From Ranitomeya imitator (lineage: Eukaryota): a DNA stretch of 64,000 nt. A program made the position numbers and the translations under genes. The notes under the pieces are model-generated. The model searched no databases. It was not told the DNA's origin and saw only the letters and a list, made by a program, of their open reading frames with translations. Shown here one piece after another: positions 2,545 to 54,818 of this stretch. The stretch lies in assembly GCF_032444005.1 (NCBI RefSeq), contig NC_091288.1, positions 220,658,001-220,722,000 of the forward strand. The letters are read 5' to 3'. Every line of letters begins with the position of its first letter. Position 1 is the first letter of the stretch.

Positions 2545-5500
2545 ATGTCCGCCACTCCCACCCCATTGCCCCTGTTGCCCTCGCTGAGCTGCGCCGTGTG
2601 CCGCGATGTGCCACGGGAGCCCGTCACCATGGCCTGCGGGCACTGCCTGTGCCGTGGCTGCCTGGAGCAGGCATGGAGGGGCCAGGAGACCTACCCGACC
2701 TGCCCCAAGTGCCGGCCCACCCCAGTGCAGACCCCGGACGGGGTACAGAGGGGGCTGTGCGCGGAGCATGGCGAGAAGATGCAGCTGTACTCCACGCAGG
2801 ACGGACGGTTACTGTGCCCGCGCTGCCGGGGGGCCACCGAGCCGCAGCCGCCTCACGCCATGATCCCCATACAGGAAGCCGTAGGCGGCTACAAGGTGAG
2901 GGCTGCGGCACTGAAGGTGGTGGTGCGCACCGGGAGCTCCACGCCATTCATGTCTTCTCTCCCGCAGGATGAGCTGATGTCGGCCATGGCACCGCTGGAG
3001 GCTCGGCTGAAGGAGCTGCAGCAGATGCAGTGCGCCCAGGAGCAGATGATCGCACAGCACCGGGTAGGACGGCAGCAGGCGGGGTATAATGGGGGCACAG
3101 GAGGGTCCACGCTGGCTCTGGGGTCCGCTCTCGTTTCACCATTACAGAGCGCCGCAATGTGGCCTTGTCGTTAGGGCCCGCCATGAAGATGTAAGGGGGT
3201 GACCAATGAGAGAGACCACCCTGTGCGCTTCTGGCGCCATTTATCTCCCAGGGTACAAAGCACTGGTGATGGCGGACCCCGAGTGTCAGAGGATCTGTGA
3301 TGGCGGGGGTCATGGGCCACCGTACAGCAGGTCATGGGCCACCGCCATCTCTGCCCTCACTGACTCCTGAGCGGCCGCCCTGACACATGGTGATGAGAAG
3401 GCAGGAGATGATGGAGAGCGGAGGATAGCCCCCCCCTCCCCCTGCCGGAGGATAGCCCCCCCCCTCCCCATGCCGGAGGATAGCCCCCCCCCTCCCCATG
3501 CCGGAGGATAGCCCCCCCCCTCCCCCTGCCGGAGGATAGCCCCCCCCTCCCCCTGCCGGAGGATAGCCCTCCCCCTGCCGGAGGATAGCCCTCCCCCTGC
3601 CGGAGGATAGCCCTCCCCCTGCCGGAGGATAGCCCTCCCCCTGCCGGAGGATAGCCCCCCCTCCCCCTGCCGAAGGATAGCCCCCCCCTCCCCCTGCCGG
3701 AGGATAGCCCCCCCCTCCCCCTGCCGGAGGATAGCCCCCCCCCTCCCCCTGCCGGAGGATAGCCCCCCCTCCCCCTGCCGGAGGATAGCCCCCCCCTCCC
3801 CCTGCCGGAGGATAGCCCCCCCCTCCCCCTGCCGGAGGATAGCCCCCCCCTCCCCCTGCCGGAGGATAGCCCCCCCCTCCCCCTGCCGGAGGATAGCCCC
3901 CCCCCTCCCCCTGCCGGAGGATAGCCCCCCCTCCCCCTGCCGGAGGATAGCCCCCCCCTCCCCCTGCCGGAGGATAGCCCCCCCCTCCCCCTGCCGGAGG
4001 ATAGCCCCCCCCTCCCCCTGCCGGAGGATAGCCCCCCCCTCCCCCTGCCGGAGGATAGCCCCCCCCTCCCCCTGCCGGAGGATAGCCCCCCCCTCCCCCT
4101 GCCGGAGGATAGCCCCCCCCTCCCCCTGCCGGAGGATAGCCCCCCCCTCCCCCTGCCGGAGGATAGCCCCCCCCTCCCCCTGCCGGAGGATAGTCCCCCC
4201 TCCCCCCGCCGGAGGATAGCCCCCTGCCCGAGGCACCCAGCTTTTCCAGGGCCACTGACGACTCTTCCTTCTCTCGCAGGGGAACCTCCTCAGCACCAAG
4301 CACCACGTGAGTCTGGAGTTCGAGAAGCTGCACCAGTTCCTGCGGGAGCGAGAGGAGCGACTGCTGCGGGAGCTGCAACAGGAGGGCGACCTGATCCTGG
4401 CCGAGATGGAGGAAAGTCTCAGCAAGATGAAGCAGAACTGCCAGGGCATCCTCCAGACCATCAGCAGCACCCAGCCGCGGCTGTACGAGCAGGACGCCGT
4501 CACCTTCCTCACCGTGAGTACCCCGACATCACAGGGGCCCCTACATGAGCCCGGGGCTAGGGGAGCCGTCACCTTCCTCACTGTGAGTACCCCGACATCA
4601 CAGGGGGAGCCGTCCCCTTCCTCACAGGGAGTACCCCGTCATCACAGGGGGAGCGGTCACCCTCCACACACAGGGGCCCCTACATGGGGCTGGGGGAGCC
4701 GTCACCTTCCTCACTGTGAGTACCCCGACATCACAGGGGGAGCGGTCCCCTTCCTCACAGGGAGTACCCCGTCATCACAGGGGGAACCATCACCTTCCTC
4801 ACAGGGAGTACCCCAACATCACAGGGGGAGCCGTCACCTTCCTCACTGTGAGTACCCCGTCATCACAGGGGGAGCGGTCCCCTTCCTCACCGTGAGTACC
4901 CCGTCATCACAGGGGGAGCGGTCCCCTTCCTCACTGTGAGTACCCCGTCATCACAGGGGGAGCGGTCCCCTTCCTCACCGTGAGTACCCCGTCATCACAG
5001 GGGGAGCCGTCACCTTCCTCACTGTGAGTACCCCGACATCACAGGGGGAACCATCACCTTCCTCACAGGGAGTACCCCGACATCACAGGGGGAGCGGTCA
5101 CCCTCCACACACAGGGGCCCCTACATGGGGCTGGGGGAGCGGTCCCCTTCCTCACCGTGAGTACCCCGACATCACAGGGGGAGCGGTCCCCTTCCTCACC
5201 GTGAGTACCCCGTCATCACAGGGGGAGCGGTCGCCCTCCTCACACGGGGCCCCTACATGATCCCCGGTCCGGCATCTTCTAGGCGACTTCATCTCACCTG
5301 AGCGGCTTTGTGGTTTTCCTGATTTTCTTACTTTTCTCTACTTTGTTCGGACGGGAGGAAGTTCTCACATTTGTGTCTTCTGTACGGTGGTCTCCTTGCG
5401 GTTGGCAGCAGGTCTGGGGTCTCCCTACACACAGACGTCCTGTAATTGATGGGTCAGACTAACTGTGCAGAACTACAAGTCTCCTCACTCTCTGCATGCT

Positions 5501-8500
5501 GGGGGTTGTAGTTCTGGGGCGTTGTTGTTGCACCTCCTGTGCCGTCTGCTTCTGTCGCCAGGCGCTGCCTTATTCATTCTGTGGGCGACGATGTTGGGCC
5601 CATAAGCGCAGGCTCTGTCCAGCCTCTGGGACTAGGGTGGCTGGGACCTGTAGTGCCATCCGGCCTTGCAGTATTGGTGCATGTGCTGTCCAGCTGGAGT
5701 AATCGGCACCGCACCTTCCTGGTACTATTGCTCCCAGCTTACTGTCGGTAGCTGCCATGTTTGGTTCTAGCCCTCTTCTCTGTCCACTTCCTGCCATTTC
5801 TTTCTGGTTTTGTTCTGTGCTGTCCTCTGGTTCTGAGCAGCCAACGGCTGACTGTGCTCCCCGTGTGAGAAGGTGAAGTCCACAGAAATCCCTCCTGCCT
5901 GTAACCGGAGTAGCTGGTGCTGAGCCTTCTCACAGTAGCCATTTTTTGAGCAGCCAGGTGACCTCTGCCATAGCCCTGTATTAGGTGCGGTCCCGGGGGG
6001 CTCGTCCCAGGGGGGGTTGTGTCCATTGCTCTGACTTTTCTCTTCTTCTCTTGCAGGATATAAAGTCGTGTATGGACATGTGAGTATCTGCTGCTCCCCC
6101 GTCTCCTGCGCCCCATCCCCGTCTCCTGCGCCCCATCACCCTGACCCCATCTAACCCACCTCGTTATCGCTCTCTGTTATCAGCTGTTATGGGGGCTACA
6201 GGGACGGTTTCCCGGCACAGAATGTGGTGGCTCCCAGAGACTTTGGCTATGGAGGAGTGAAGGACCTGATCCAATATACGGCCTGGAAGGACATGAAGTC
6301 TTATATCAGCCCCGGTGAGCAGACCCCCTAAGATAGCGACACTACAGCGCCCACAAAATAACCCCCCATACACCCATGTATTGTATACAGGACCCCTGGT
6401 ATATGTGTGTGTGTGCCCCCCAGAGACCACTGCTGTGTACAGGACCCCTGGTATATGTGTGTGTGCCCCCCAGAGACCTGTGCTGTGTACAGGACCCCTG
6501 GTATGTGTGCCCCTCCCCCCTCAAGACCTCTGCTGTATACAGGACCCCTGGTATGTATCATTATTATTATTATTATTATTATTATTTATTATTATAGCGC
6601 CATTTATTCCATGGCGCTTTACATGTGAGGGGTATACATAATAAAAACAAGTACAATAATCTTAAACAATACAAGTCATAACTGGTACAGGAGGAGAGAG
6701 GACCCTGCCCGCGAGGGCTCACAATCTACAAGGGATGGGTGAGGATACAGGAGGAGAGGACCCTGCCCGCGAGGGCTCACAATCTACAAGGGATGGGTGA
6801 GGATACAGGAGGAGAGGACCCTGCCCGCGAGGGCTCACAATCTACAAGGGATGGGTGAGGATACAGGAGGAGAGGACCCTGCCCGCGAGGGCTCACAATC
6901 TACAAGGGATGGGTGAGGATACAGTAGGTGAGGGTAGAGCTGGTCATGCAGCGGTTTGGTCGATCGGTGGTTACTGCAGGTTGTAGGCTTGTCGGAAGAG
7001 GTGGGTCTTCAGGTTCTTTTTGAAGGTTTCGATGGTAGGCGAGAGTCTGATGTGTTGTGGTAGAGAGTTCCAGAGTATGGGTGATGTGCGAGAGAAATCT
7101 TGTATGTGATTGTGGGAAGAGGAGATAAGAGGGGAGTAGAGTAGGAGATCTTGTGAGGATCGGAGGTTGCGTGCAGGAGAGTACCGGGAGACGAGGTCAC
7201 AGATGTATGGAGGATACAGGTTGTGGATGGCTTTGTACGTCATGGTTAGGGTTTTGTAGCGGAGTCTCTGGGCAATGGGGAGCCAGTGAAGGGATTGACA
7301 GAGGGGAGAGGCCGGGGAATAACGGGGGGACAGGTGGATTAGTCGGGCAGCAGAGTTTAGAATAGATTGGAGGGGTGCAAGAGTGTTCGAGGGGAGGCCA
7401 CAGAGCAGGAGGTTGCAGTAGTCAAGGCGAGAGATGAGGGCATGGACTAGGGTTTTTGCAGATTCTTGGTTGAGGAATGTACGGATCCGTGAAATATTTT
7501 TTAGTTGAAGGCGGCAGGAAGTGGAAAGGGCTTGGATATGTGGTTTGAAGGAGAGATCAGTGTCGAGGATTACCCCGAGGCAGCAAGCTTGTGGGACTGG
7601 GGAGAGTGGGCAGCCGTTTACTGTAATGGATAGGTTCGTTGTGGGGGGTCGCGTTAGATGGGGGAAAGATGATGAATTCTGTTTTGTCCATGTTAAGTTT
7701 CAGAAATCTAGCGGAGAAGGAGGATGAAATAGTGGACGGACATTGAGGGATTCTGGTTAGAAGGGAGGTGATATCTGGTCCAGAGATGTAGATCTGTGTC
7801 ATCAGCATAGAGGTGATACTGAAAGCCGTGAGATTCTATGAGCTGTCCCAGGCCAAAGGTGAAAATGGAGAAGAGCAAAGGCCCAAGGACTGAACCTTGT
7901 GGGACTCCGACAGATAGAGGGCGAGGTGAGGAGGTGGTGTGTGAGTGGGAGACGCTGAATGTCCTGTCTGTTAGGTATGATGAGATCCAGGATAGGGCCA
8001 AGTCTGTGATTCCAAGGGATGAGAGGGTCTGTAATAATAGGGAATGGTCCACTGTGTCAAAGGCAGCCGACAGGTCGAGGAGGACAGAGTAGTGTCGCTT
8101 GCTCTTGGCGGTTAATAGGTCATCGGTGACTTTAGTTAGGGCAGTTTCAGTGGAATGGTGTGACCGGAAGCCAGATTGTAAGCGGTCAAAGAGGGAGCAA
8201 GAAGAGAGATGGGAGGACAGTTCAAGGTAAATGTGTTGTTCCAGTAGTTTTGAGGCATTGGGGAGAAGTGATATAGGGCGATAGCTAGATACAGAGGATG
8301 GGTCAAGAGAGGGCTTTTTGAGGATAGGTGTGATGGAGGCATGTTTAAAGCTTGAGGGGAAAACACCAGTTGTTAGTGATAGGTTGAAGAGATGGGTTAG
8401 GGTTGGGATGAAGACTGTGGTGAGGTTTGGGATGAGGTGGGATGGGAGTGGGTCAAGTGCACAGGTGGTGAGATGCGATCTTGAGAGTAGAGTGGAGAGT

Positions 8501-10984
8501 TGATCTTCTGTAATGGTGGAGAAGTTGGTTTTGGAGGTGAAGGGCTGGGAAGTCGGGAGGAAGAGCTCTAGTGGTTGTCTTTCAAAACTGTCTCTGATGC
8601 GATCAATCTTCTGCTTGAAAAATTAGGCAAAGTCTTCAGCTGAGATGAGTGGGGAGGGAGGAGGTGCTGGGGGACGGAGGAGAGAGTTGAAGGTGTTGAA
8701 TAACTGTTTGGGGTTGTAAGACAGTGAGGATATGAGAGATGAGAAGTAGGTTTGTTTAGCTGTGGCGAGTGTGGTCTTCAAAGTAGTGAAGGACTGTTTG
8801 AAAGCGATGAAGTGCTCGTTGGAGTGGGATCTTTTCCATCTCCACTCTGCAGCCCTGGAAGCTCGCCTCAGTTCTTTGGTCAGGCTGGTGTGCCAGGGCT
8901 GTCTGTTGATTTTGCGAGCTTTGGTATGTGTGAGAGGGGCAAGAGATTCCAAAGCTACAGCTATTGTTGTGTTATATAGAGCGGCAGCGTCATCCACATT
9001 GTGTATGGAACTTATGTCTGTGAGAGGGAGGAGGGATTCAGAGAATGAGTGTAGATCAAGGTGTTTAAGATTTATGCGAGGGTGTGAAAGTTTGTGGGGT
9101 GGGGATTGTAGATAAGGAGTGGAGAGGTAAGAGAATGTGAGTAGATTGTGGTCAGGAAGAGGTGAGTTAGAGAGGTTAGATAGGGAGCAGAGGCGGGTGA
9201 AGATGAGGTCCAGTGTGTGACCGTCTTTGTGAGTGGCTGCAGAGGACCATTGAGTGAGGCCGAAGGAGGAAGTGAGAGATAGAAGCTTAGTGGCAGCTGA
9301 GAGGGAAGTGTCAATGGGGATGTTGAAGTCGCCCATGATGATAGTGGGGATGTCCGCAGAAAGGAAATGAAGTAGCCAGGTGGTGAAGTGGTCAAAGAAG
9401 GTGGTGGCTGGCCCTGGGGGGCGGTAGATGACAGCCAGTTGGAGGGGGAGTAGATGCGCACAGAGTGCACCTCAAAGGAAGGGAGGGTAACAGAGGGTGG
9501 CAGTGGGATTGGGGTGAAGGAGCAGTTATCTGACAGGAGAAAACCAACTCCTCCGCCATGTTTGCTGCTGGGGCAGGGGGTGTGAGAAATGTATGTTTGC
9601 TCCCCACAGTCCGCTGCTGTATACGGGACCCCTGGTATGTGTGCGCCGGCCCCCCACAGACCTCTGCTGTATACAGGACCCCTGGTATGTGTGCGCCCAC
9701 CCCCCACAGACCTCTGCTGTATACAGCACCCCTGGTATGTATGTGTGCGCCCGCCCCCCACAGACCTTTGCTGTATACAGCACCCCTGGTATGTGTGTGC
9801 CCCCAACAGACCTCTGCTGTATACGGGACCCCTGGTATGTGTGTGCCCCCCACAGACCTTTGCTGTATACGGGACCCCTGGTATGTGTGCGCCCCCCACA
9901 GACCTTTTCTCTATACGGGACCCCTGGTATGTGTGCGCCTCCCACAGACCTTTGCTCTATACAGCACCCCTGGTATGTATGTGTGCGCCCCGCACAGACC
10001 ACTGCTGTATACGGGACCCCTCGTGTGTGTGTGCCCCCCACAGACCTCTGCTGTATACGGGACCCCTGGTATATGTGTGTGTGTGTGTGCCCCCCACAAA
10101 CCTTTGCTGTATATAGGACCCCTGGTATATGTGTGCGCCCCCCCACAGACCTCTGCTGTATACAGCACCCCTGGTATATGTGTGCGACCCCCACAGACCT
10201 TTGCTGTATACAGCACCCCTGCTATATGTGTGTGCCCCCCACAGACCTCTGCTGTATACAGGACCCCTGGTATGTGTGCGCCCCCCCCACAGACCTGCTG
10301 TATACGGGACCCCTGGTATGTGTGCGCCCCCCACAGACCTCTGCTGTATATGGGACCCCTGGTATGTATGTGCCCCCATACACTGCTGCCCCTGTCGCCA
10401 TCTCCCGGCACCATCTTTACTCCTCTCCTTCTTTTCCAGCCTTACCGGACATCATCATGGACCCCAGCACGGCCCACCTGAACCTGGTGCTGTCTGAGGA
10501 CCTGACCAGCGTCCGATACAGCGACACCAAGCAGTCGTTACCCGAGAACCCGCGCCGCTTCGACTACTGCTGCTGCGTCCTGGGCACCGAAGGCTTCACC
10601 TCCGGCCGCCATTACTGGGCTATCGACGTCGGCAGCAAGACCAAGTGGAATCTCGGTGTGGCCAAAGAGTCGGTGAACCGCCGGGGCGGGATCACGCTGT
10701 CCCCGGAGAACGGCTTCTGGATACTGTGGCTCAGGAATGGCCACGAGTTCAAAGCCCTGGACGTCCCGTACCGGACGCTGACCCTGAGGAGCAAACCGCA
10801 GCGCGTGGGCATTTACCTCGACTACGAGGGCGGCCAGCTGTCCTTCTACAATGCCGACGACATGTCCCACATCTACACCTTCGTCACCTCCTTCTCCGAG
10901 ACCATCTACCCCTACTTCTGCCCCTGCCTGAACGACTCGGGGAAGAACGGGGGGCCCCTCAGGGTCCTTCACCACGTGCCGTGA
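2545..10984 (+). CDS. trim69: TRIM69-like E3 ubiquitin ligase (RING, degenerate B-box, coiled coil, PRY-SPRY), about 459 aa, spliced
   Basis: Exons 2545-2895, 2968-3063 (96 nt), 4280-4513 (234 nt), 6057-6079 (23 nt), 6184-6314 and 10440-10984, all GT-AG with consistent phases; the 96/~231/23-nt sizes are typical of class IV TRIMs. C3HC4 RING CAVC..CGH..CRGC..CPKC. The B-box [23 protein letters not shown] has Ser at the third ligand, like human TRIM69 CPEHGENLKLFSKPDGKLICFQC (recalled). Also [22 protein letters not shown] and the C-terminal [18 protein letters not shown], all matching recalled TRIM69. AATAAA at 11080-11085. Confidence 0.88.
3417..4225. repeat. ~27-bp C-rich minisatellite (GAGGATAGCCCCCCCCTCCCCCTGCCG) in TRIM intron 2
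   Basis: About 30 tandem copies varying in C-run length; ends about 55 bp before the exon 3 acceptor. Confidence 0.95.
4495..5260 (+). repeat. Minisatellite built from the TRIM exon 3 end plus 5' splice site (CCGTCACCTTCCTCAC(C/T)GTGAGTACCCCGACATCACAGGGGGAG, ~43 bp)
   Basis: The unit repeats the exon-terminal codons V-T-F-L-T and the GTGAGT donor about ten times. Confidence 0.9.
6370..6556. repeat. ~45-bp minisatellite (CTGTATACAGGACCCCTGGTATGTGTG..CCCCCACAGAC), left part
   Basis: Same unit as 9600-10375; the array is split by the L2 insertion. Confidence 0.9.
6560..9598 (-). mobile_element. L2-clade LINE, 5'-truncated, frameshifted ORF2 (APE endonuclease + reverse transcriptase)
   Basis: Minus-strand fragments [58 protein letters not shown] and [15 protein letters not shown]. 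3' stem-loop AGCGCCAT/ATGGCGCT (6596-6618) followed by a (TAA)n tail at 6560-6595. Confidence 0.92.
6688..6925. repeat. 58-bp tandem repeat x4 within the L2 3' UTR
   Basis: AGGAGGAGAGGACCCTGCCCGCGAGGGCTCACAATCTACAAGGGATGGGTGAGGATAC repeated almost perfectly. Confidence 0.92.
9600..10375. repeat. ~45-bp minisatellite, right part (TRIM intron 5)
   Basis: About 17 copies; ends about 60 bp before the PRY-SPRY exon acceptor. Confidence 0.92.
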
Positions 10985-11424: not shown

Positions 11425-14400
11425 TCACGCCGAGACCCTCCTCAGCTTCATCTGACTCCCCCGCAGCGTCAGTGGGTAATCCACCCAGGTGGTCCAGGAG
11501 AACGCGGGGTGCAGGGGGTCGGTCATGTGGTAGCGAGCGTTCAGGCCGGCCTCAGCGCAGCCCCCTGTGTGGTACCAGAAGCCTCCTCCCCAATACTCCG
11601 CGCAGTTCTGTGCGTGTCCGTCCTGGTCGTGGTCATACGTGGAGAACGTGTGTCCGGCGTGGAGGCTCAGCGCGTCCCCTGCAAAGACAAGGGCGGCTTA
11701 AAGGGACTGTCCATGTTATGTGCATGACCTCGTGAGTGAACTTCCCAGCCGTCTGCCCATATGACCGCTGCAGCCAATCATTGACCTCCAGATTCTGGTG
11801 TGAGATGACTGAGATCAGTGATTGGCTGCAGCGGTCACGTGGGTAGACTGCTTTAACTGCAGGAAAGTTTGCAGAGACCCCCAGAGCAGCAGAGGTGAAT
11901 GGGAAGTGGGGGTTAAAAGGTAATTTTTTATTTTTTTTTAATTCTGGACAATCCCTTTAAATAATCTCAACAAAACGTTTGCATGTAAGTGTCGTCCTCA
12001 CCGGCCCCTCCATCGCTGAACGCCCCGAGGTGCAGGCGGTATCCGTCACTGTCCGGGTTCAGGGCGTGGTGGGACAGGCTGAAGTTGGTGTACTGTGCTG
12101 TGACCCGCGTCCCCTCCGCATCCTCCAGCTCCACCCGCAGCTCGTAGTCGCCGCTCACGGTCAGGCGGTAAATATTCTGCAGTCCTGGTACCGAGGGGAG
12201 AGGTCAAAACGTGTAAAGACGCGGCCACCCATATGCAGTGTCGCCACAGTCACCGCACCCACAACCCAAGAATGGCAGCATGGCGCCCAACTCCAACACC
12301 CGCGCCGACCTCGGCCCCTGGGGATGTCCAACCTTCCCTCCATGTGAGGCTGCGGCACCGCCACCACTTACCGAGCCAGTACTCGCCGTCCGCGCTCCCG
12401 AAGCCACGCACGTAATCCTGCCAGGGGCGGCCAAATTCCTCCGAACCGTCCAGACGCCTCTGAAACACCTGTCAGGGGGCAGTTAGTGCAAAAGGATGGT
12501 ATAAGCCAACTACACCAGCTCACCTGTCACCCCCAGGAATACTCACCGTCCACACCAGCTCACCCGTCACTCCCCCCCCCCCCCTCCCCCTCCCCAGGAA
12601 TACTCACCGTCCACACCAGCCCACCCATCACTCCCCCCCTTCCCCAGGAATACTCACCGTCCACACCAGCTCACCCGTCACCCCCAGGAATACTACTCAC
12701 CGTCCACACCAGCCCAACCGTCACTCCCGCCGCCCCACCCCCAGGAATACTCACCATCCACACCAGCCCACCCGTCACCCCCAGGAATAATCACCGTCCA
12801 CACCAGCCCACCCGTCACCCCCAGGAATAATCACCGTCCACACCAGCCCACCCGTCACCCCCAGGAATAATCACCGTCCACACCAGCCCACCCGTCACCC
12901 CCGTGAATAATCACCGTCCACACCAGCCCACCCGTCACCCCCGTGAATAATCACCGTCCACACCAGCCCACCTGTCACCCCCAGGAATAATCACCGTCCA
13001 CACCAGCCCACCTGTCACCCCCAGGAATACTCACCGTCCACACCAGCCCATCCCCGATCACCCCCAGGAATACTCACCATCCACACCAACCCACCCGTCA
13101 TCCCCCAGGAATAATCACCGTCCACACCAGCCCACCCGTCATCCCCCAGGAATACTCACCGTCCACACCAGCCCACCCGTCACCCCCAGGAATACTCACC
13201 ATCCACACCAGCCCACCCATCACCCCCAGGAATACTCACCATCCACACCAGCCCACCTGTCACCCCCAGGAATAATCACCGTCCACACCAACCCACCCAT
13301 CACCCCCAGGAATACTCACCATCCACACCAGCCCGTAACCCCCAGGAATACTCACCGTCCACACCAACCCACCCATCACCCCCAGGAATACTCACCGTCC
13401 ACACCAGCCCGTCACCCCCAGGAATACTCACCGTCCACACCAGCCCACCCATCACCCCCAGGAATACTCACCGTCCACACCAGCCCGTCACCCCCAGGAA
13501 TAATCACCGTCCACACCAGCCCACCTGTCACCCCCAGGAATAATCACCGTCCACACCAGCCCACCTGTCACCCCCAGGAATAATCACCGTCCACAACAAC
13601 CCACCCGTCATCCCCCAGGAATACTCACCGTCCACAACAACCCACCCGTCATCCCCCAGGAATACTCACCGTCCACACCAGCCCACCCGTCACCCCCAGG
13701 AATACTCACCATCCACACCAGCCCACCTGTCACCCCCAGGAATACTCACCGTCCACACCAGCCCACCCGTCACCCCCAGGAATACTCACCGTCCACACCA
13801 GCCCACCCATCACCCCCAGGAATACTCACCGTCCACACCAGCCCACCCATCACCCCCAGGAATACTCACCGTCCACACCAGCCCACCCGTCACCCCCAGG
13901 AATAATCACCGTCCACACCAGCCCGTCACCCCCAGGAATACTCACCGTCCACACCAGCCCGTCACCCGTCACGTCACAGTACACTGGCAGGGGGCGCTGC
14001 GCCCCTTGTGGATATATGATGTAGACTCCGCTAGGGGGTCCTTGTAAGTCACAAATATCCTGGCAGTCTACAGGAAGCCGTCCACCGTCACACAGGGGCC
14101 GCAGAGCTGAGAAGGGGATAACAGTCACTAGTGTGGGGCCAGGATCACATGGAGCATGAACGTGCGTCTACATGTGCATATACAGTGAGCGTGCGTATAC
14201 AGTGAGCGTGCATATGTAGTGTGTGTATACAGTGAGCGTGCATACTGTATATAGTGGACATACATATTGTATAAAGTGAGCATACATACTGTAGTGAGTA
14301 TACATTGTGTAGTGAGCGTGCTCACCTGTGTGTGGATGTTTGTAGTGAGCATACGTATATAGTAAGCACATACACTGTATACAGTGTGTGCATACTGTAG

Positions 14401-22627: not shown

Positions 22628-25600
22628 TTAGACTTTGATGGCAAGCTTCATCTCACATGCCTTCAGTGAGTAGCGTTGCCCCTTCCATGATTTCCAAGTC
22701 ATACCCTTTGCATCTTGGTCATTTTTGCCCTTCAGGTATAGGCCATTGAGGTTGGCCATGTGACAGGCGTTGTACCAGGAGGCTCCACGAAAACTGGCTG
22801 CACAGTTACCTGCACTGTTGTCTCTGTCATTGTCATGAGTGGAAAACTTCATCTCGTTCTGAGTTTTCAGTGAATCTCCTGTTGAGATTGTAGACAAAGA
22901 TAATATTACGAAATGCAAAATATCTATGGTCAACACTCAAACCAGCCTTGACCTTACGTCCATCTTTTAGTTTGTGACCCTCACATAATATTTCCCATTT
23001 TTTAAGGCTTTGTTCCTTATACAATACAATGACCTCAATGGATAAGACTGTAAAGAGATCATCAAAATGAAGGCAGCAAAAGGGGTAAAGATGTATTGGG
23101 CAGGGATGTAGAAGACAAGATTTAATTTTCACCTGTACCAAAGAAAAACAACAAAGAACTTCCAAGAACCCTAAAAACCACTGAAGATGTCAACCTCTTA
23201 CCGATAGGTTTGTTGGGGTCGCCATCTTTAAATGCACCAATATAGAGCTTGTATCCGTCCTCCTCTTGATCAATGGCAAACGGAGACAAAGAGAAGGTGT
23301 CATAGATCCCATACCGAGCATCATTGTCAAAATCTACTAGGTCAACCCGGAGATAATAGGACCTCTTCTGGGTGAGGAGGTGAATGTTCTGCAGACCTGG
23401 AGATGATGGCAGGAGGATTTGTGATGTTATACATATCACAAGATTAAAAAGTAAAAAGAATATATAAAAGACAAACTATAAACCCTACCCAGCCAATATT
23501 CTCCATTCGCATTCCCAAACCCTTTCTTATATTCTTTCCAGCCACGATAGAAGTCAACACTCCCATCAAACCTCTTCTGAAACACCTGGAGAGCAGGAGA
23601 CAACCATTAATGGGTCCACATGTGAAAACGCAAGAAACTTAACTAATGTTTCTTGAACATATGGAATTCTCAAACTCTCATCACTATTCATGACTTAGTT
23701 GTTTGAAACTATTTTTAACCTGCAATCTCTCTCATAAATAAGTTTTCTACAGTCTGACAAGAATTCGTCTGGTGCATCAGCTTATATATGCTTATAGAAA
23801 ACAATGTAGACTTATCACTCTCACCCACAAAGCTGTGAACTGGACCACCCTACATCTGTCTACCACCCAACCCGTCCTCTCTACAGTGCTGCACCACCCT
23901 ACATCTCCTCCTCATCTCTGTCTACCACTTTCCTGTCCTCTCCACAGTGCTGCACCACCCTACATCTCCTCCTCATCTCAGTCTACCACCTTCCCGTCCT
24001 CTCCACAGTGCTGCACCACCCTACATCTCTTCCTCATCTCTGTCTACCACTTTCCTGTCCTCTCCACAGTGCTGCACCACCCTACATCTCCTCCTCATCT
24101 CAGTCTACCACCTTCCCGTCCTCTCCACAGTGCTGCACCACCCTACATCTCTTCCTCATCTCTGTCTACCACTTTCCTGTCCTCTCCACAGTGCTGCACC
24201 ACCCTACATCTCCTCCTCATCTCTGTCTACCACCCTACCTATCCTCTCCACAGTGCTGCATCACTCTACATGTCCTCCTCATCTCAGTCTACCACCTTCC
24301 CGTCCTCTTCACAGTGCTGCACCACCCTACATCTCCTCCTCATCTCTGTCTACCACCTTCCCGTCCTCTCCATGGTGCTGCACCGCCCTACATCTCCTCC
24401 TCATCTCAGTCTACCACCTACCTATCCTCTCCACAGTGCTGCATCACTCTACATGTCCTCCTCATCTCAGTCTACCACCTTCTCATCCTCTCCACAGTGC
24501 TGCACCACCCTACATCTCCTCCTCATCTCTGTCTACCACCTTCCCGTCCTCTCCACAGTGCTGCACTGCCCTACTTCTCCTCCTCATCTCTACCACCTAC
24601 CTGTCCTCTCCACAGTGCTGCTCAACCCTAAATCTCCTCCTCATATCTGTCAACCACCCTACCTGTGCTCTCCACAGTGCTGCACCACCCTACATCTCCT
24701 CCTCATCTCTGTCTACCACCTTCCCGTCCTCTCAACAGTGCTGCACCGCCCTACATCTCCTCATCATCTCTGTCTACCACCTTCCCATCCTCTCTACAGT
24801 GCTGCACCACTCTACATCTCCTCCTCATCTCTGTCTACCACCTTCCCGTCCTCTCCACAGTGCTGCACCACTCTTCATCTCCTCCTCATCTCTGTCTACC
24901 ACCTTCTCGTCCTCTCCACAGTGCTACACCGCCCTACATTTCCTCCTCATCTCTGCCACCTACCCGTCCTCTCCACAGTGCTGCATCAACCTACATCTCC
25001 TCATCTCTACCACCTACCTGTCTTCTCCACAGTGCTGCTCCACCCTAAATCTCCTCCTCATCTCTGTCTACCACCTTCCCGTCCTCTCCTCAGTGCTGCT
25101 CAACCCTACATCTCCTCCTCTTCTCTGTCTACCACCTTCTCATCCTCTCCACAGTGCTACACTGCGCTACATCTCCTCCTCATCTCTGCCACCTACACTC
25201 CCTCTCCACAGTGCTGCACCACCCTACATCTCCTCCTCATCTCTGCTTACCACTTACCTGTTCTCTCCACAGTGCTGCACCGGTTTGCATCTCCTGCTCA
25301 TCTCTGTCTACCACCATACCTGTCTTCTCCACAGTGCTGCACCACCCTACATTCCCTCCTCATCTGTCTACCACCATACCTGTTCTCTCCACAGTGCTGC
25401 ACCACCCTACATCTCCTCCTCATCTCTGCTTACCGCTTTCCTGTCCTCTCCTCAGTGCTGCACCACCCTATATCTCCTCCTCATCTCTGCCTACCACCTT
25501 ACCTGTCCTCTCCACAGTGCTACACCACCATACATCTCCTCCTCATCTCTGCTTACCACTTTCCTGTCCTCTCCTCAGTGCTGCACCACCCTATATCTCC

Positions 25601-26687
25601 TGCTCATCTCTGCCTACCACCTTACCTGTCCTCTCCACAGTGCTGCACCACCCTACATCTCCTCCTCATCTCTGTCTACCACCTTACCTGTCCTCTCCAC
25701 AGTGCTGCCCCGCTTTACATCTCCTCTTCATCTCTGTCTACCACCTACTTGTCCTCTTCACAGTGCTGCACCGCCCTACATCTCCTCCTCATCTCTGTCT
25801 ACCTCCTTACCTGTCCTCTCCACAGTGCTGCACCACCCTACATCTCCTCCTCATCTCTGTCTACCACCTACTTGTCCTCTCCACAGTGCTGCACCACCCT
25901 ACATCTCCTCCTCATCTCTGCTTACCACTTTCCTGTCCTCTCCTCAGTGCTGCACCACCCTACATCTCCTCCTCATCTCTGTCTACCACTACCCGTCACT
26001 CCTATTTCTCACCGTCCAGGGTCCACCATCGCTGCTCATGTCACAATACACAGGTACTGGGGGAGAGCTCAGACCACCAGGATAAATCAGGTACACGCCG
26101 TCTGAGGTCAGACCCTGAGCAAATACATCCGAGCAGTCAAGAGGGTGGCAGGTATCTCTGCAGGTATCGACTAGAAGGAGAGGACACAAGACGCGGTCAG
26201 AGGCCTCTGTAGATCAATTGCATCTAAAGATGTTATTACACTTCACCCTAAACTCTTTATAAAGTCAATCATTAAAATATCTCTACTTACAGCAAAATTG
26301 CAGATCTCATGGTTCTTAAATGATCCCTTAAAATATAATTTTCCCCGATTTACCTAGTTCCTATGTTCCCATGCCCCTTAATAGAGGGGTGGCGCTATAC
26401 TTACAACTACTCTGGTTCAGAAGTGCAGATCCTGGGGTCACGTAACCGCTCTGCAGCAGCAAAAAAAAGGCGAAATTCAGCGTCAGCTTCTGATTGGAGG
26501 AGAAGTATATAAATGTTATTACAGGTCAGTGTTGCCAGTAATATATCTGATCTGTCAATAATTAGGATCTTCGTCACATCGTTTATTCATATCCGGACTT
26601 ATAATTAGCCCATAGCGTACCAGGAATCATCTCTCACGGGTAACGTTGTATCACCGGACACTACCACCACTGTGTTCTTACCTCCAT
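22628..26687 (-). CDS. MFAP4-like fibrinogen-domain protein, paralog B, 263 aa, spliced
   Basis: Exons 26687-26682 (ME), 26489-26405 ([15 protein letters not shown].. signal peptide), 26170-26013, 23585-23489 (97 nt), 23396-23202 (195 nt) and 22878-22628. GT-AG throughout, frame intact. Motifs [58 protein letters not shown] at about 22238-22243. Confidence 0.9.
23845..25995. repeat. ~61-bp minisatellite (CTCTCCACAGTGCTGCACCACCCTACATCTCCTCCTCATCTCTGTCTACCACC..) in paralog B intron 3
   Basis: About 35 degenerate copies; abuts the exon 3 donor at 26012. Confidence 0.93.
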
Positions 26688-28474: not shown

Positions 28475-28670
28475 GTTTTCTGATACCACCAGAGGTTGGC
28501 ACAATCTTCATCTCCGTCCACTGTAAGGTATGATGCCAGAATCTCACCCACCGGTGATGCCATGCTGGTAGTAACCATTTAGATTAGTGCCGTGACACTG
28601 GTTGTACCAGGAGGCTCCATGACAGATCCGAGCACAATTATCATCATCTGTATCTCCATCGTGACTATGG
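28475..28670 (-). pseudogene. Orphan degenerate copy of the MFAP4-like last exon
   Basis: HDGDTDDDNCARICHGASWYNQCHGTNLNGYYQHGITGG* then, after a frameshift or deletion, QWTEMKIVP; closest to paralog C exon 6. Confidence 0.8.
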
Positions 28671-29272
28671 ATCAGACATTTGTCCTGGTTATTGCTTAGA
28701 AGAGATTTCTCTCTGAATGAAAACACAAACCCAGCCCCCTCTCCTATAACGAGTTGGCTTCTGGATTTATCTACATTTTGGCATTCCTTGATTCCTGCCC
28801 ATTCAACAACCCAACAGTCGGCTCTTGCCAACTTTCACCATACCCAAAACCAAACCATTATCTGGTTCAATGTGGCTCATACTCAGGTACTTAGAGGGCA
28901 AGATCAGGATTGGACTGGTCCATGGTCCATTCGATCACCAGAAGATCCTCAGATTGACCATAATTCTAATACTACATTGGACCCCTACCAAAAGCTGATT
29001 CAAAGACAACCTTATTTGGTGGAGACTTTGGAGCCAATCACTAGAATACATTTTTTTAAGGGAAATAAAGAAAAATATTCACATCTACTCAACGGTAAGA
29101 AGTTAAGAGTTTTTTGATTAAAATGAACTTGTTTGTGGGTAAACCCTTGTAATGATAAAGTCCGGTTCTATAACTACATGCATTATTGAAGGTATGTACA
29201 TTGTACTGGCGCCGGTGATCCGCTACTCTCTGGTGGTTTCCCTCACTTAGATCATGTGACTTTGTGCCGCCA

Positions 29273-32200
29273 TCACTGTTGCTCTGACTTAGTGGGCGCG
29301 ATCTTCATCTCAGTCCTCTTTAATGAATAATAAGCTCCTTTCCACGTGGCCCACACAACGCCGGTGGCGTACTCCGCGGTGACGCCTTGCTGGTATTTCC
29401 CATTCAGATTGGCGCCATGACAGTGGTTGTACCAGAAGGCCCCGTGATACATCACTGCACAGTTACCGACATAGACGTCTCGGTCGCGGTCGTAGGTAGA
29501 AAAGTTCATCCGGTTGTGATTCGGTAGAGAATTTCCTGGAAATTAGAAAACTGAGCTGAATACGTTTCCTGGGGCAGAACTTTAGTATCTTTCTTTCCTT
29601 TGGACCCTGAATGGCGCCATTACTATATACTGGCATCGTATGGCATGAATATTTGTTTTGGATTGTATACTACACTACTTTTTATGTTTAGTTACTGTGT
29701 GGTGCTATTGTTTATGCACAGTATGGCGGTATTATTTGTGTACTGTATGGCAGTGTAATTTAGGCACTGCATTGCACTATTATTCATGCACTGTATGGCA
29801 GTATTATTATGCACTGTATAGCAGTATTATTTATGCACTGTATGACAGTAGTATTATGCACTGTATGGTAGTATTATTTATGCACTGTATGGTAGTATTA
29901 TTTATGCACTGTATTGCAGTATTTTATGCACTGTATAGCAGTATTATTATGCACTGTATAGCAGTATTATTTATGCACTGTATGGTAGTATTATTTATGC
30001 ACTGTATGGTAGTATTATTTATGCACTGTATTGCAGTATTATTATGCACTGTATGAGAGTATTATTATGCACTCTATGGCAGTATTATTTATGCACTGTA
30101 TTGCAGTATTATTATGCACTGTATAGCAGTATTATTTATGCACTGTATTGCAGTATTATTATGCACTGTATGGCAGTATTATTTATGTGCTGTACTGCAG
30201 TATTTTATGCACTGTATTATTTATGCACTGTATTGCAGTATTATTATGCACTGTATGGCAGTATTATTATGTACTGTATGACAGTATTATTATGCACTGT
30301 ATAGCAGTATTATTTATGCACTGTATTGCAGTATTATTATGCACTGTATTGTAGTATTATTATGTACTGTATGACAGTATTATTATGCACTGTATAGCAG
30401 TATTATTTATGCACTGTATTGCAGTATTACTATGCACTGTATGGCAGTATTATTTATGCGCTGTATTGCAGTATTTTATGCACTGTATTGCAGTATTATT
30501 ATGCACTGTATGACAGTATTATTATGCACTGTATAGCAGTATTATTTATGCACTATATTGCAGTATTATTTATGCACTGTATTGCAGTATTATTATGCAC
30601 TGTATGACATTATTATTATGCACTGTATAGCAGTATTATTTATGCACTGTATTGCAGTATTATTATGCACTGTATGACAGTATTATTTATGCACTGTATT
30701 GCAGTATTTTATGCACTATATGGCAGCATTATTTTTGCACTGTATGGCAGTATTATTTATGCACTATATTGCAGTATTATTTATGCACTGTCTGGCACTA
30801 TTATTCATTCACTGTATAGCTGTATTATTTATACACTGCATGACAGTATTATTTATGCACTGTATTGCATTATTATTTATGCACTGTATGGCAGTATTAT
30901 TATGCACTGTATGGCACTATTACATACCAGCACGTTTTGCAGGATCTCCCTCCTTAAAGCCATCAATATCCAGCTTGTACCCGTCCTCGTCAGGGTTGAT
31001 GGCCAGAGGTGAGAGGGAGAAGGAGTCATAGGTCACATGTCGTGTGTTGTTCTCAAAGTCCTCCATGTCGATGCGCAGACCATACGTCTTCTTCTGGGTC
31101 AGGAGGAAAATATTCTGTAAACCTAAATACATGATTGACAAGTAATAAGCATTGTGCCCCCAAATGTGAAGCCAGTGCCCCCAAAGTGAGGAAGGAGCAG
31201 TTACCCAGCCAGTATTCTCCGGAGGCTCGGCCAAAGCCAAACTTATAGTCTTCCCAACCCCGGTAGAAATCCACACCACCATCAAACCTCTTCTGGAAGA
31301 CCTGCAAGGAGACGAACAGTTCAGCTCCAGAGACACTGAGCCAGCGGGGAGCATCTGTGTGATGAGAGATGGCGGAGATGTCATCTATAGAGCGAGACTC
31401 AGACATTGGTAGGACGGGCGTCAGATGATGTCAGAGGAGCAGGTACTCACCATCCAGGGTCCTCCATCACCACTACATGCATCCAATGAGAGTATAGGGA
31501 CACACAATGATCTAAGACTATCATCCTCCATAACCTGAGCCTCCCATTACCATTTCTAAGACTTCTCTCATGCTGCACCATCTCTCTGAAATGTGCTACC
31601 ACAAAGTCACAGCGGCTACTTACCGTCCAGGGTCCTCCAGCGCTGCTCATGTCACAATACACAGATACAGGAGAGGAGCTCACACTGCCCAGGTATATGA
31701 GGTACACCCCGTCCGAGGTCAGTCCCTGCGCAAACACATCCGAGCAGTCGAGGGGGTGGCAGGTATCTCTGCAGATATTGACTAGGAGGAGAGGGCACAA
31801 GATGAGCTCATATAACGTTGTCATTACACCATAGAAATGTCCATTTAGTTACCGTAAACTTTCAGTCACTGAAAGGGAGCAGCCATGTAAGAGGGTTACA
31901 AATGACTTCTGGCGAAAGAAGGACTGGCCGATTGATTTGTGAGCTATCATCTCCCACACCTGGACTTGTGCTCATTGTGTGAGAGCGGTGGACTGTGGTC
32001 ACGTTCCTGCCCCCGAAGCCATCAATCGCATTGTAATATAGTGTAAATAATGTTATGCCTCTTTTACTGTGGCATCTAAGCAAGAAGTGCCTCGTAAGTA
32101 AATGTTCTTCTGTTAAAGAGTCGGTGGGGAATCTCCAGCCAGGGCCGTCCTGTAAATTATACTGAGGTTATGGCCTACCGGACAAGGCAGGCGTTCCTCT

Positions 32201-36894: not shown

Positions 36895-37350
36895 GCTTTC
36901 TTCTGAATCTCCCTCATTAAACCCATCAGTATCCAGCTTGTTCCCGTCCTCCTCAGGGTTGGTGGCCAGAGGTGAGAGGGAGATGGAGTCATAGGTCACA
37001 TGTCATGTGTCGCTCTTAAAGTCTGCCATGGCGATACGTACGGTAGGTCTTCTTCTGGGTCTGGAGGAAAATGTCAGTAAACCTGTAGAAATCAACTTCA
37101 TGTCCCCCTCGAAATGTGAAGCCAATGACCCAATGAAAGGAAGGAACAGTAACCCAGCCAGTAGTCTCCAGAGGCTCGGCCAAAGGTAAACTTACAGTCT
37201 TCCCAACCACCGCCATCAAACCTCTTCAGAAAGACCTGAAGGAGACAAACAGCTCAGCTCTAGTCACGCTGAGCCAGCAGGAGGCAGCAGTGTGATGAGA
37301 GATGGAGGAGACATCATCTATAGAGCGAGACTCAGACATTTTTAATAATA
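36895..37350 (-). pseudogene. MFAP4-like pseudogene fragment (intron 3 end, exon 4, exon 5), paralog C lineage
   Basis: Exon 4 at 37235-37154 with a 15-nt deletion (VDFYR lost). Exon 5 at 37082-~36895 with frameshift and stop. The intron sequence 37240-37345 matches paralog C 31300-31410. Confidence 0.85.
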
Positions 37351-52395: not shown

Positions 52396-54818
52396 CCGTT
52401 GGCGCTGGCAGACACACGGTTAAGCAGATAATGCTGCGCAGACCGCAGAGCGCTGGGGGAATGTTCTGCAGAATATGATGTAATTAGAGTTTGTATCCAA
52501 GTGTCTGGGAACAGACTAAACATTGGGGCCAAGTCTGAGACTGTACGAAGTGACAGCAGCGACACTGACACCGACAGCACCGCCGACAGCACAAGTCCAA
52601 GTGTCGTCAGGCTGCAGCTCCCGGCGACCTCACTGTGGGGGTGCAGCATTTATACCCCAGTCCTGGAGCAAACAGGGGGCTCCAGCATTATCTGCACAAA
52701 ACACAACACAAGCCCTCACACAGGGCCGACTCCAGGTTTTCATGGACCCCAAGCGAAAGAGTCTCAGTGGCCCCTTTACCACAAACCACGATTCATGATG
52801 GACAGATAAGAAGCATAGGTACAGGACAATGCCAAAGAATTCACTTACACAGCACATAGTCCTCCATATAGTATAACGCACAGCCCATAGTCCTCCATAT
52901 AGTATAATGCACAGCCCATAGTCCTCCATACAGTATAATGCACAGTCCATAGTCCTCCATATAGTATAATTCACAGCCCATAGTCCTCCATACAATATAA
53001 TGCACAGTCCATAGTCCTCCATATAGTATAATGCACAGCCCATAGTCCTCCATATAGTATAATGCACAGCCCATAGTCCTCCATACAGTGTAATGCACTC
53101 CCATAGTCCTCCATATAGTATAATGCACAGCCCATAGTCCTCCATATAGTATAATGCACAGCCCATAGTCCTCCATATAGTATAATGCACAGCCCATAGT
53201 CCTCCATATAGTATAATGCACAGCCCATAGTTCTCCATATAGTATAATGCACAGCCCATAGTTCTCCATATAGTATAATGCACAGCCCATAGTCCTCCAT
53301 ACAGTATAATGCACAGCCCATAGTCCTCCATATAGTATAATGCACAGCCCATAGTCCTCCATATAGTATAATGCACAGCCCATAGTCCTCCATACAGTAT
53401 AATGCACAGCCCATAGTCCCCCATATAGTATAATGCACAGCCCATAGTCCTCCATACAGTATAATGCACAGCCCATAGTCCTCCATATAGTATAATGCAC
53501 AGCCCATAGTCCTCCATACAGTATAATGCACAGCCTATAGTCCTCCATATAGTATAATGCACAGCCCATAGTTCTCCATATAGTATAATGCACAGCCCAT
53601 AGTCCTCCATACAGTGTAAAACACAGCCCATAGTCCTCCATATAGTATAATGCACAGCCCATAGTCCTCCATATACTATAATGCAAAGCCCATAGTTCTC
53701 CATATAGTATAATGCACAGCCCATAGTTCTCCATATAGTATAATGAAAATCCCATAGTCCTCCATACAGTATAATGCACAGCCCATAGTCCTCCATACAG
53801 TATAATGCACAGCCAATAGTCCTCCATATAGTATAATGAAAATCCCATAGTCCTCCATACAGTATAACGCACAGCCCATAGTCTTCCATATAGTATAATG
53901 AAAATCCCATAGTCCTCCAAACTGTAAAATGCACAGCCCATAGTCCTCCATATAGTATAATGAAAATCCCATAGTCCTCCATATAGTATAATGCACAGCC
54001 AATAGTCCTCCATATAGTATAATGCACAGCCCATAGTTCTCCATATAGTATAATGCACAGCCAATAGTCCTCCATATAGTATAATGCACAGCCCATTGTC
54101 CTCCATATAGTATAACGCACAGCCCATAGTTCTACATATAGTATAATGAATAGCCCATAGTCCTCCTTACAGTATAATGTACAGCCCATAGTCCTCTATA
54201 TAGTATAACGCACAGCCCATAGTCCTCCAAATAGTATAATGCACAGCCAATTGTTCTCCATATAGTATAATGCACAGCCCAAGTTCTCCATATAGTATAT
54301 TTCACAGCCCATAGTTCTGCATATAGTATAATGCACAGCCCATGGTCCTCCATATAGTATAATGCACAGCCCATAGTCCTCCATATAGTATAACGCACAG
54401 CCCATAGTCCTCCATATAGTATAATGCACAGCCCATAGCCCTTCTTATAGTATAATGCACAGCCCCTAGTTCTCCATATAGTACAATACACAGCCCATAG
54501 TTCTTGATATAGTTTAATGCGCAGCCCATAGATCTCCATATAGTTTAATGCACAGCACTTAGTTCTCCATACAGTATAATGCACAGCCCATAGTTTTCCA
54601 TATAGTACAATACACAGCCTTTAGTACTCCATATAGTGCAATACACAGCCCATAATTCTCCATAAAGTATAATGCACAGCCCATAGTCCTCCATATAGTA
54701 TAATGCACAGCCCATAGTCCTCCATATAGTATAAATGCACAGCCCATAGTCCTCCATATAGTATAATGCACAGCCCATAGTTCTCCATATAGTATAATGG
54801 ACAACCCATAGCCCTCCA

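What the first reader, a model, noticed from the sequence alone, without database searches (positions are those of the whole stretch)
12500..13965. An intron made almost entirely of about 37 tandem copies of its own exon end and 5' splice site
Intron 3 of paralog A (13945-12469) is nearly all repeats of GGGCTGGTGTGGACG|GTGAGTATTCC, the last five codons plus the donor. Only about 30 nt of unique sequence precede the acceptor. The next copy (+36 nt, in frame, adds [12 protein letters not shown]) carries the weaker GTGATT, and the copy at +76 nt is GTGAGT but out of frame. The spliceosome must choose one of dozens of near-identical U1 sites. The array could act as a decoy or sponge, cause NMD-coupled regulation, or make copy-number variation tune expression (inference).
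Basis: seen in the sequence. Interest (0 to 1): 0.74.

Follow-up and report, generated by a model that had tools for sequence, protein, structure and literature searches.

The report
Splice-donor minisatellite in frog lectin gene
A 1.4-kb tandem repeat that grew out of an exon/intron boundary of a frog ficolin-like gene puts 34 extra copies of the splice-start signal into the intron, but assembled RNA uses only the first, genuine one, as in repeats long known from human F7, IFI6, CBS and ABCA7.

Summary
On the minus strand, the intron 13945-12469 of a fibrinogen-domain (ficolin/MFAP4-like) gene is filled by a 36-61-nt (mostly 40-nt) minisatellite. Its unit is the last 22 nt of the exon plus the donor and 14 nt of intron.

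I count 35 donor-bearing copies: the genuine one plus 34. Of the extras, 22 match the genuine site over -1 to +6 (G|GTGAGT) and 12 are the weaker GTGATT. A truncated copy and 44 unique nt precede the acceptor.

Spliced contigs from two studies join 13946 to 12468, the first donor to the acceptor. No contig lies in the array. The decoy, NMD and dosage ideas have no support here, though contigs cannot exclude rare isoforms.

Paralogs in the same window show the ancestral intron was short (76 nt in one paralog). A duplication there could therefore easily span a splice site.

This layout is a described class: F7 IVS7, IFI6, CBS, LMNB2 and PDGF (PMC1557585) and ABCA7 (PMC5954066).

The scan has already noted 16 such arrays elsewhere in this genome, said in those notes to be the mimic poison frog. 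A second one lies in this window's TRIM gene.

Verdict: real, a new member of a known kind, most likely a tolerated by-product of a genome very rich in minisatellites.

The parts
13946..14106 (-). Exon 3 of fibrinogen-domain paralog A, ending ...[11 protein letters not shown]. Its last 22 nt are part of the repeat unit.
   Evidence: Pfam Fibrinogen_C match, E 1e-06. Contigs cover 13943-14109 and continue into an upstream exon. Acceptor tcag|CTCTGC.
13937..13948 (-). Genuine 5' splice site ACG|GTGAGTATT; the intron starts at 13945. It is the first of 35 in the array and the one used in RNA contigs.
   Evidence: Joint 12465->13943 with cut +3, i.e. 13946 joined to 12468, in X3 and X8. U1 duplex energy -11.3 kcal/mol.
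12513..13967 (-). Minisatellite of 36 units (35 with a donor, one truncated). Unit = 22 nt of exon end + GTGAGTATTCCTGG. The main variant is 40 nt, with 36-, 41- and 43-nt variants and a degenerate G-rich 3' end.
   Evidence: TRF, copy table, unit alignment.
13901..13912 (-). Donor copy 2 (+36 nt, in frame, would add [12 protein letters not shown]). It carries GTGATT, a weak U1 match.
   Evidence: -5.4 against -11.3 kcal/mol.
13850..13852 (-). First in-frame stop (TGA) of read-through from exon 3. Any transcript using donors 4-35 would carry it.
   Evidence: ORF 13850..14128; translation per donor.
12469..12512 (-). Unique 44-nt 3' end of the intron, with the branch-point-like CACTAAC, a short C-rich tract and the acceptor CAG.
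   Evidence: Sequence; the acceptor is confirmed by the RNA joint.
12372..12468 (-). Exon 4 ([33 protein letters not shown]), 97 nt.
   Evidence: Pfam Fibrinogen_C, E 2.8e-10; joints on both sides.
12002..12184 (-). Exon 5 of paralog A.
   Evidence: Joints 12183/12371 and 11677/12001; Pfam.
11425..11678 (-). Exon 6 (last coding exon) of paralog A, with the stop codon at 11427-11425.
   Evidence: tblastn against paralog exons; contigs; stop located.

Best explanation
This is a minisatellite (VNTR-type array) seeded by a tandem duplication of about 36-43 nt across the exon 3/intron 3 boundary of a ficolin/MFAP4-like fibrinogen-domain gene, at a time when that intron was short (well under 350 nt, perhaps under 100). 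Slippage or unequal exchange then expanded it to 36 units. Each unit carries the exon end and the donor, so the pre-mRNA has 35 donors in a row. The splicing machinery uses the most upstream one, which is the genuine site, and the other 34 stay silent as pseudo-sites. The array is tolerated for two reasons. All copies lie downstream of the genuine donor. The 44 nt holding the branch point, pyrimidine tract and acceptor were left untouched. Shown here: the array, its exon origin, the first-donor splice in RNA contigs, and the short homologous introns in paralogs. Inferred: the order of events, the reason the first donor wins (5'-to-3' scanning as shown for F7, and/or exon definition), and neutrality.
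For: Array and copy table. RNA: spliced contigs in X3 (organism A, study P2; 3 mismatches in 262 nt) and X8 (organism B, study P3; about 92-93% identical) join 13946 to 12468, and all four runs have zero depth across 12561-13918. Host gene under constraint: 14 synonymous against 7 non-synonymous differences between the X8 contig and the window, and Pfam Fibrinogen_C on exons 3-6. Short ancestral intron: the homologous intron is 76 nt in paralog E and 322 nt in C, while in A the non-repeated parts total about 58 nt (14 nt of intron in the unit plus the 44-nt tail). Variant-repeat pattern typical of minisatellites: adjacent identical pairs, a block of six GTGATT units, and a degenerate distal end. 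Repeat-rich setting: 22 arrays cover 40% of the window. [quoted passage not shown] In IFI6 and CBS the genuine site plus the next two copies are used; in LMNB2 and PDGF only the genuine site is used (PMC1557585).
Against: Contigs drop rare variants, so low-level use of donors 2, 3 or later is not excluded. Only three studies were laid, and tissue and stage are unknown. No population or cross-species DNA was examined, so neither polymorphism nor conservation is known. Two donor-spanning arrays in one 64-kb window is somewhat more than my rough chance estimate (about 0.3 expected, Poisson P about 0.04). This leaves room for a mutational or selective bias. G-run intron signals, which could help mark the array as intron, are reported to be rare in frog introns (PMC3606033), so that part of the mechanism is weak.
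Confidence: 0.75

Rival explanations
1. Regulatory array. The extra donors are used at a low level, giving frameshifted or stop-containing transcripts removed by NMD, or they bind U1 unproductively. Array length would then tune output or neighbouring-exon inclusion, as reported for the ABCA7 intron 18 VNTR.
For: 22 of the 34 extra donors match the genuine site over -1 to +6 (G|GTGAGT) and in U1 pairing energy; 16 are identical over the full -3 to +6 nine-mer (ACG) and 6 carry ATG. Donors 4-35 would include a stop at 13852-13850, and donor 3 gives a frameshift with a stop in exon 5. ABCA7 VNTR length correlates with lower expression and exon 19 skipping, and about 2% of transcripts retain one unit (PMC5954066).
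Against: No contig in four runs uses any donor but the first, and none lies in the array. In F7 the pseudo-sites do not compete at all (PMC1557585). In ABCA7 the effect on expression was not through NMD. The array is absent from the homologous intron of paralogs C and E, so it is not a family feature.
Confidence: 0.14
2. Protein-diversifying array. Alternative in-frame donors add repeat-encoded peptide segments to the lectin domain, as the 6-16 (IFI6) minisatellite does.
For: Donor 2 at +36 nt is in frame and would add [12 protein letters not shown]. According to PMC1557585, 6-16 uses the genuine site plus the next two copies.
Against: The main unit is 40 nt, so the frame rotates and a stop appears after 31 extra codons, at the 32nd. 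The only in-frame copy has the weak GTGATT, -5.4 against -11.3 kcal/mol. No such junction appears in the contigs. The insertion would fall in the conserved GGWTV(F/I)QRR core of the fibrinogen domain.
Confidence: 0.04
3. Assembly artefact. The array is real, but its length or copy order is an expansion or mis-assembly.
For: Tandem arrays are error-prone in assemblies.
Against: The copies are not identical: they form an ordered pattern of 36/40/41/43-nt and GTGAGT/GTGATT variants. The array is only 1.4 kb, well within single long reads. Similar arrays make up 40% of the window. The exon junctions around it are confirmed.
Confidence: 0.05

Closest known systems
Human F7 intron 7 37-bp VNTR (Borensztajn et al. 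2006, PMC1557585)
   Same: The first monomer spans the exon/intron boundary and the genuine donor is followed by identical pseudo-donors. Only the most upstream is used, and the unit size is similar (37 against 36-40 nt).
   Different: F7 has 5-9 repeats with only 4 nt of exon in the unit. Here there are 36 units with 22 nt of exon. The F7 donor is the weaker UGG/gugggu. In F7 the scanning mechanism and the polymorphism were shown by experiment; here they were not.
Human interferon-inducible 6-16 (IFI6) intron 2 minisatellite (Turri et al. 1995, as cited in PMC1557585)
   Same: There are many reiterated donors (25 pseudo-sites) directly after the genuine one, a comparable copy number.
   Different: In 6-16 the two nearest pseudo-sites are used constitutively. 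Here only copy 2 is in frame, it is weakened, and no alternative junction was seen. I could not read the original paper.
Human CBS intron 13 VNTR (Yang et al. 2000, as cited in PMC1557585)
   Same: The VNTR lies on the exon/intron border with 15-20 repeats. [quoted passage not shown]
   Different: Two CBS pseudo-sites are reported as used. Here GTGATT is not special to copy 2, since 12 copies carry it.
Human ABCA7 intron 18 25-bp VNTR (De Roeck et al. 2018, PMC5954066)
   Same: The array directly flanks the exon and includes its donor, with tens to hundreds of units. Its use of the second unit's donor gives a frameshifted transcript.
   Different: In ABCA7, length was shown to correlate with expression and exon 19 skipping. 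Nothing of that kind was tested here.
Human LMNB2 and PDGF boundary minisatellites (as cited in PMC1557585)
   Same: Only the genuine donor is used despite 10-18 reiterated copies.
   Different: Their units are longer (100 and 81 bp).

Membership tests
Exon/intron-boundary (splice-donor) minisatellite, F7 IVS7 type | Head-to-tail tandem array of 10-100-nt units in an intron | tested here: met
   TRF: period 40, 30.9 copies, 92% matches; 36 units aligned.
Exon/intron-boundary (splice-donor) minisatellite, F7 IVS7 type | The first monomer spans the exon/intron boundary | tested here: met
   The unit's last 22 nt equal the end of exon 3, and the boundary is fixed by the RNA joint 13946|12468.
Exon/intron-boundary (splice-donor) minisatellite, F7 IVS7 type | The genuine donor sequence is reiterated in the intron | tested here: met
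   34 extra donors: 16 identical to the genuine site over -3 to +6 (ACG|GTGAGT), 6 ATG|GTGAGT, 12 GTGATT.
Exon/intron-boundary (splice-donor) minisatellite, F7 IVS7 type | Only the most upstream site(s) are used in mRNA | tested here: met
   Contigs of two studies use the first donor and none uses another. This holds at contig level only; rare isoforms were not testable.
Exon/intron-boundary (splice-donor) minisatellite, F7 IVS7 type | Copy number varies in the population (VNTR) | not tested
IFI6-type in-frame multi-donor array giving protein isoforms | Unit length is a multiple of three, so successive donors stay in frame | tested here: not met
   The main unit is 40 nt, the frame rotates, and a stop follows after 31 extra codons.
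Fibrinogen-related-domain (ficolin / FIBCD1 / MFAP4-like) gene (host gene) | Pfam Fibrinogen_C (PF00147) across the exons | tested here: met
   Exons 3, 4 and 5 of A score E 1e-06, 2.8e-10 and 3e-06. Exon 6 aligns to the paralogs' last exons. The last exon of paralog B hits ficolin-2, FIBCD1 and MFAP4 structures at E 1e-23 to 1e-21. Exons were searched one by one; the joined protein was not searched.

The most novel reading that the evidence does not exclude
Donor-spanning minisatellites are not scattered accidents but a systematic feature of this dendrobatid genome. The scan has noted 16 in about 48 Mb read, plus two arrays and a 29-nt second copy in this window, and none at acceptors. That could reflect a mutational bias that seeds arrays at 5' splice sites. 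Alternatively, it could reflect a strong selective filter that lets arrays overlap donors but never acceptors. Either way it would give hundreds to thousands of natural 'duplicated-donor' experiments on the first-donor rule in one genome.
Probability: 0.15. Interest if true: 0.55.

Novelty: new member of a known kind. Interest (0 to 1): 0.25.

Why it matters
As a single locus it matters little. It is one more boundary minisatellite, larger than most human examples, in a fast-evolving lectin gene, and it behaves like the classic cases. Its use is as a natural test of 5' splice-site choice: 22 pseudo-donors matching the genuine site over -1 to +6 lie at 76 to 1399 nt from it, yet the first is chosen in the contigs. 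Together with the other cases noted in this genome, it suggests that a census of arrays against splice sites in minisatellite-rich frog genomes could measure two things. One is how strict the most-upstream-donor rule is. The other is how strongly selection keeps arrays away from acceptors.

Tried and rejected
1. **Shared origin of the arrays in paralogs A and B (homologous intron).** Local alignment of units scores no better than shuffles (430 of 500 shuffles reach it), so the expansions are independent. The idea that B's unit derives from intron sequence shared with C is only weakly supported (1 of 500 shuffles for B's intron start, 86 of 500 for the units).

2. **G-quadruplex array.** The intron is 50% G, with 95 G-runs on the sense strand, but it has only 2-3 canonical four-run motifs. 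I dropped this as a main feature.

3. **G-runs as the reason the array reads as intron.** This is plausible from mammalian work. However, G-rich intronic elements are reported as scarce in frog introns (PMC3606033), so I keep it only as a weak inference.

4. **Donor motifs as a general property of this window's arrays.** Only 4 of 22 arrays carry many GTRAGT motifs, and in two of those (the 86-mer satellite) the motif arises at the unit junction by chance.

5. **The original IFI6 paper (PMC306954).** It is not held, so IFI6, CBS, LMNB2 and PDGF details rest on their summary in PMC1557585.

6. **Steps not done.** I ran no large protein search, since the family scans left nothing open. The species name comes only from earlier scan notes and was not checked by me.

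Full report
**What is there**

On the minus strand, 12300-14200 holds two exons of a fibrinogen-domain gene separated by a 1477-nt intron. The upstream exon ends ...TGTGACGTGACGGGTGACGGGCTGGTGTGGACG ([11 protein letters not shown]), followed by GTGAGTATTCCTGG. The downstream exon starts GTGTTTCAGAGGCGT (VFQRRLDGS...). Both exons match Pfam Fibrinogen_C (E 1e-06 and 2.8e-10).

Tandem Repeats Finder reports a period-40 array of 30.9 copies at 92% identity (12736-13960), with a degenerate continuation down to about 12579.

Anchoring on the donor motif, I find 35 copies of TGGA[C/T]G|GTGA[G/T]TATT:
- The genuine site is at 13945, and 34 more lie at +36, +76, +116 ... +1399 nt.
- After these come a truncated unit and 44 unique nt. 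The unique part holds a CACTAAC branch-like motif, a C-rich tract and the acceptor CAG.
- The unit is the last 22 nt of the exon plus the first 14 nt of the intron.
- Four units are 36 nt. Most are 40 nt through an extra TGGG. A few are 41-43 nt, and the last four are stretched by G-rich inserts.

**The donors**

| Class | Copies | U1 5'-end duplex energy |
|---|---|---|
| ACG\|GTGAGT (includes the genuine site) | 17 | -11.3 kcal/mol |
| ATG\|GTGAGT | 6 | -11.1 kcal/mol |
| ACG\|GTGATT | 12 | -5.4 kcal/mol |
| Perfect consensus, for reference | - | -14.0 kcal/mol |

- Copy 2 (+36) is the only one that stays in frame. It would add [12 protein letters not shown], and it is a weak GTGATT.
- Copy 3 (+76) shifts the frame and meets a stop in exon 5. 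For this check I translated each exon in its carried-over phase rather than joining exons.
- Copies 4-35 would include the TGA at 13852-13850.

**What the RNA shows**

None of the runs that hold parts of the stretch is on record as RNA. Their contigs are nevertheless spliced at three consecutive GT-AG introns of this gene, and each contig set holds only 51-87 million letters. I therefore take them as transcriptomes; this is an inference.

A 367-nt contig in X3 (organism A, study P2; 3 mismatches) and a 663-nt contig in X8 (organism B, study P3; about 92-93% identical) both skip 1477 nt. The tool places the cut at +3, which means 13946 joined to 12468. That is the first donor joined to the acceptor.

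Joints at 12372|12184 and 12002|11678 define exons 4-6. X2 and X8 contigs run from exon 3 into an upstream exon that ends at 14889. Depth is zero in all four runs across 12561-13918.

The X8 contig differs from the window at 14 synonymous and 7 non-synonymous listed sites. This fits a gene under purifying selection.

There is one limit. Contigs keep the major form only, so rare use of other donors cannot be excluded.

**Where the array came from**

The window holds a cluster of paralogs on the minus strand. The homologous intron differs greatly among them:

| Paralog | Intron 3 length | Content |
|---|---|---|
| A | 1477 nt | The 36-61-nt (mostly 40-nt) array described here |
| B | 2427 nt | A 61-mer x 35 array starting about 35 nt after its donor; the unit is unrelated to A's |
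| C | 322 nt | No array, but a 29-nt second copy (25/29 identical) of its own exon end plus donor, 173 nt into the intron |
| E | 76 nt | No repeat |

In A the non-repeated intron parts add up to about 58 nt. The simplest history is a short ancestral intron in which a 36-43-nt tandem duplication happened to straddle the donor, followed by expansion. In so short an intron, a duplication of that size has a large chance of including a splice site.

The unit alignment shows the usual marks of minisatellite turnover:
- adjacent identical pairs;
- a block of six GTGATT units;
- interspersed 36-nt units;
- a degenerate distal end.

**Why it is tolerated, and how it probably works**

The experimental model is human F7 intron 7. 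There, a 37-bp VNTR spans the exon 7 boundary. [quoted passage not shown] The most upstream site is chosen by a 5'-to-3' process, even against pseudo-sites improved to a consensus value of 91 (PMC1557585).

Applied here by inference, the genuine donor wins because it is first. The copies are harmless because they all lie downstream of it.

The mirror case would be copies of an acceptor upstream of the real one. That would put false sites in first position. It fits that every array I could place in this window stays away from the 3' end of its intron:

| Distance measured | Values in this window |
|---|---|
| Array end to acceptor | 44, 62, 167 and about 270 nt |
| Array start relative to donor | -22, -17, +6 and +35 nt |

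The pattern is anecdotal.

G-runs (95 on the sense strand, 1 on the antisense) might also mark the array as intron. However, such elements are reported as scarce in frog introns (PMC3606033), so I give this little weight.

**How common it is**

Forty per cent of this window is tandem arrays, 22 in all. A second array, at 4495-5260 in the TRIM gene on the plus strand, repeats GCCGTCACCTTCCTCAC[C/T]|GTGAGTACCCC. It holds ten donors, counting the genuine one at 4514.

The scan's earlier notes list 16 such findings in this genome and none for acceptors. The genes they name include EMC1, STT3A, GALNS, MFN2, POLQ, FLVCR1, NECAP1, PIF1, TBC1D10B and ZNRF1. Those notes name the species as the mimic poison frog, which I did not verify.

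Two rough estimates of the chance expectation follow.
- **This window.** About 27 donors x 32 positions / 64,000 x 22 arrays gives about 0.3 expected, against 2 seen (Poisson P about 0.04).
- **The 48 Mb scanned.** Using this window's array density, and recalled round figures of about 200,000 donors and a 6.8-Gb genome, I expect about 20, against 16 noted.

Sheer abundance of minisatellites may therefore explain the recurrence. A census is needed to say more.

**Comparison with known cases**

The layout is a described class. PMC1557585 lists F7, 6-16 (IFI6: 25 pseudo-sites, the first three sites used), CBS (15-20 repeats), LMNB2 (10-15 x 100 bp, only the genuine site used) and PDGF (16-18 x 81 bp).

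The ABCA7 25-bp VNTR includes the exon 18 donor. About 2% of its transcripts retain one unit, and its length correlates with lower expression and exon 19 skipping (PMC5954066).

**Verdict**

This is a new and large member of a known kind, most likely a tolerated by-product of a repeat-rich genome. The scan has found the same kind of array many times before on other DNA of this genome.

Noticed in passing
window 4495-5260 (+): A second donor-spanning minisatellite lies in the TRIM (RING/B-box/coiled-coil/PRY-SPRY) gene. Its 44-nt units repeat the exon end GCCGTCACCTTCCTCAC[C/T] plus GTGAGTACCCC. It holds ten donors, counting the genuine one at 4514, at offsets 69-687 nt and in mixed frames.
   Followed up: partly
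window 23855-25989 (-), intron 3 of paralog B: The homologous intron of paralog B holds an unrelated 61-mer x 35 array. It starts about 35 nt after the donor, and some units carry CAG|GTAAGG or GTAAGT-like sites. It shows no similarity to A's unit beyond shuffles.
   Followed up: partly
window 31437-31465 (-), intron 3 of paralog C: A 29-nt second copy (25/29 identical) of paralog C's own exon 3 end plus donor (TGGAGGACCCTGGATG|GTGAGTACC) sits 173 nt inside the 322-nt intron. It may be the remnant or the seed of a similar array.
   Followed up: partly
window 40455-40530 (-), intron 3 of paralog E: The homologous intron in paralog E is only 76 nt and has no repeat. It is probably close to the ancestral state.
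   Followed up: yes
window 29706-30922 (-), intron 5 of paralog C: A 24-mer x 52 array begins about 6 nt after the donor GTATGT of exon 5 without repeating it, and ends 167 nt before the acceptor. It is another array that hugs the 5' end of its intron.
   Followed up: partly
whole window: About 40% of the 64 kb (25.7 kb) is tandem arrays, 22 of them. This is unusually dense even for a repeat-rich vertebrate genome.
   Followed up: partly
window 40782-43545 and 58249-61853: The same 86-mer satellite occurs as two arrays (32 and 42 copies) in opposite orientation. A GTGAGT arises at each unit junction by chance.
   Followed up: no
window 52848-58235: Three arrays of one 31-mer (64, 30 and 27 copies) alternate with duplicated 72-bp and 122-bp repeats rich in CCTCGACCAATCAG. 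This is a segmentally duplicated block.
   Followed up: no
window 12378-12392 versus the array unit (-): Exon 4 ends with GGACGGCGAGTACTGG (DGEYW), which resembles the unit's GGACGGTGAGTATTCC. In one frame the array reads VDGEYSWG. This is probably coincidence between the W-T|GTGAGT junction and the DGEYW motif.
   Followed up: no
window 36910-37235 (-) and 28529-28705 (-): Decayed fibrinogen-domain fragments are present. Paralog D's exons 4-5 carry a 5-residue deletion and an in-frame stop, and there is a lone last-exon fragment with a stop.
   Followed up: no
window 7708-9336 (-): LINE-type endonuclease and reverse-transcriptase ORF fragments lie inside a TRIM gene intron.
   Followed up: no
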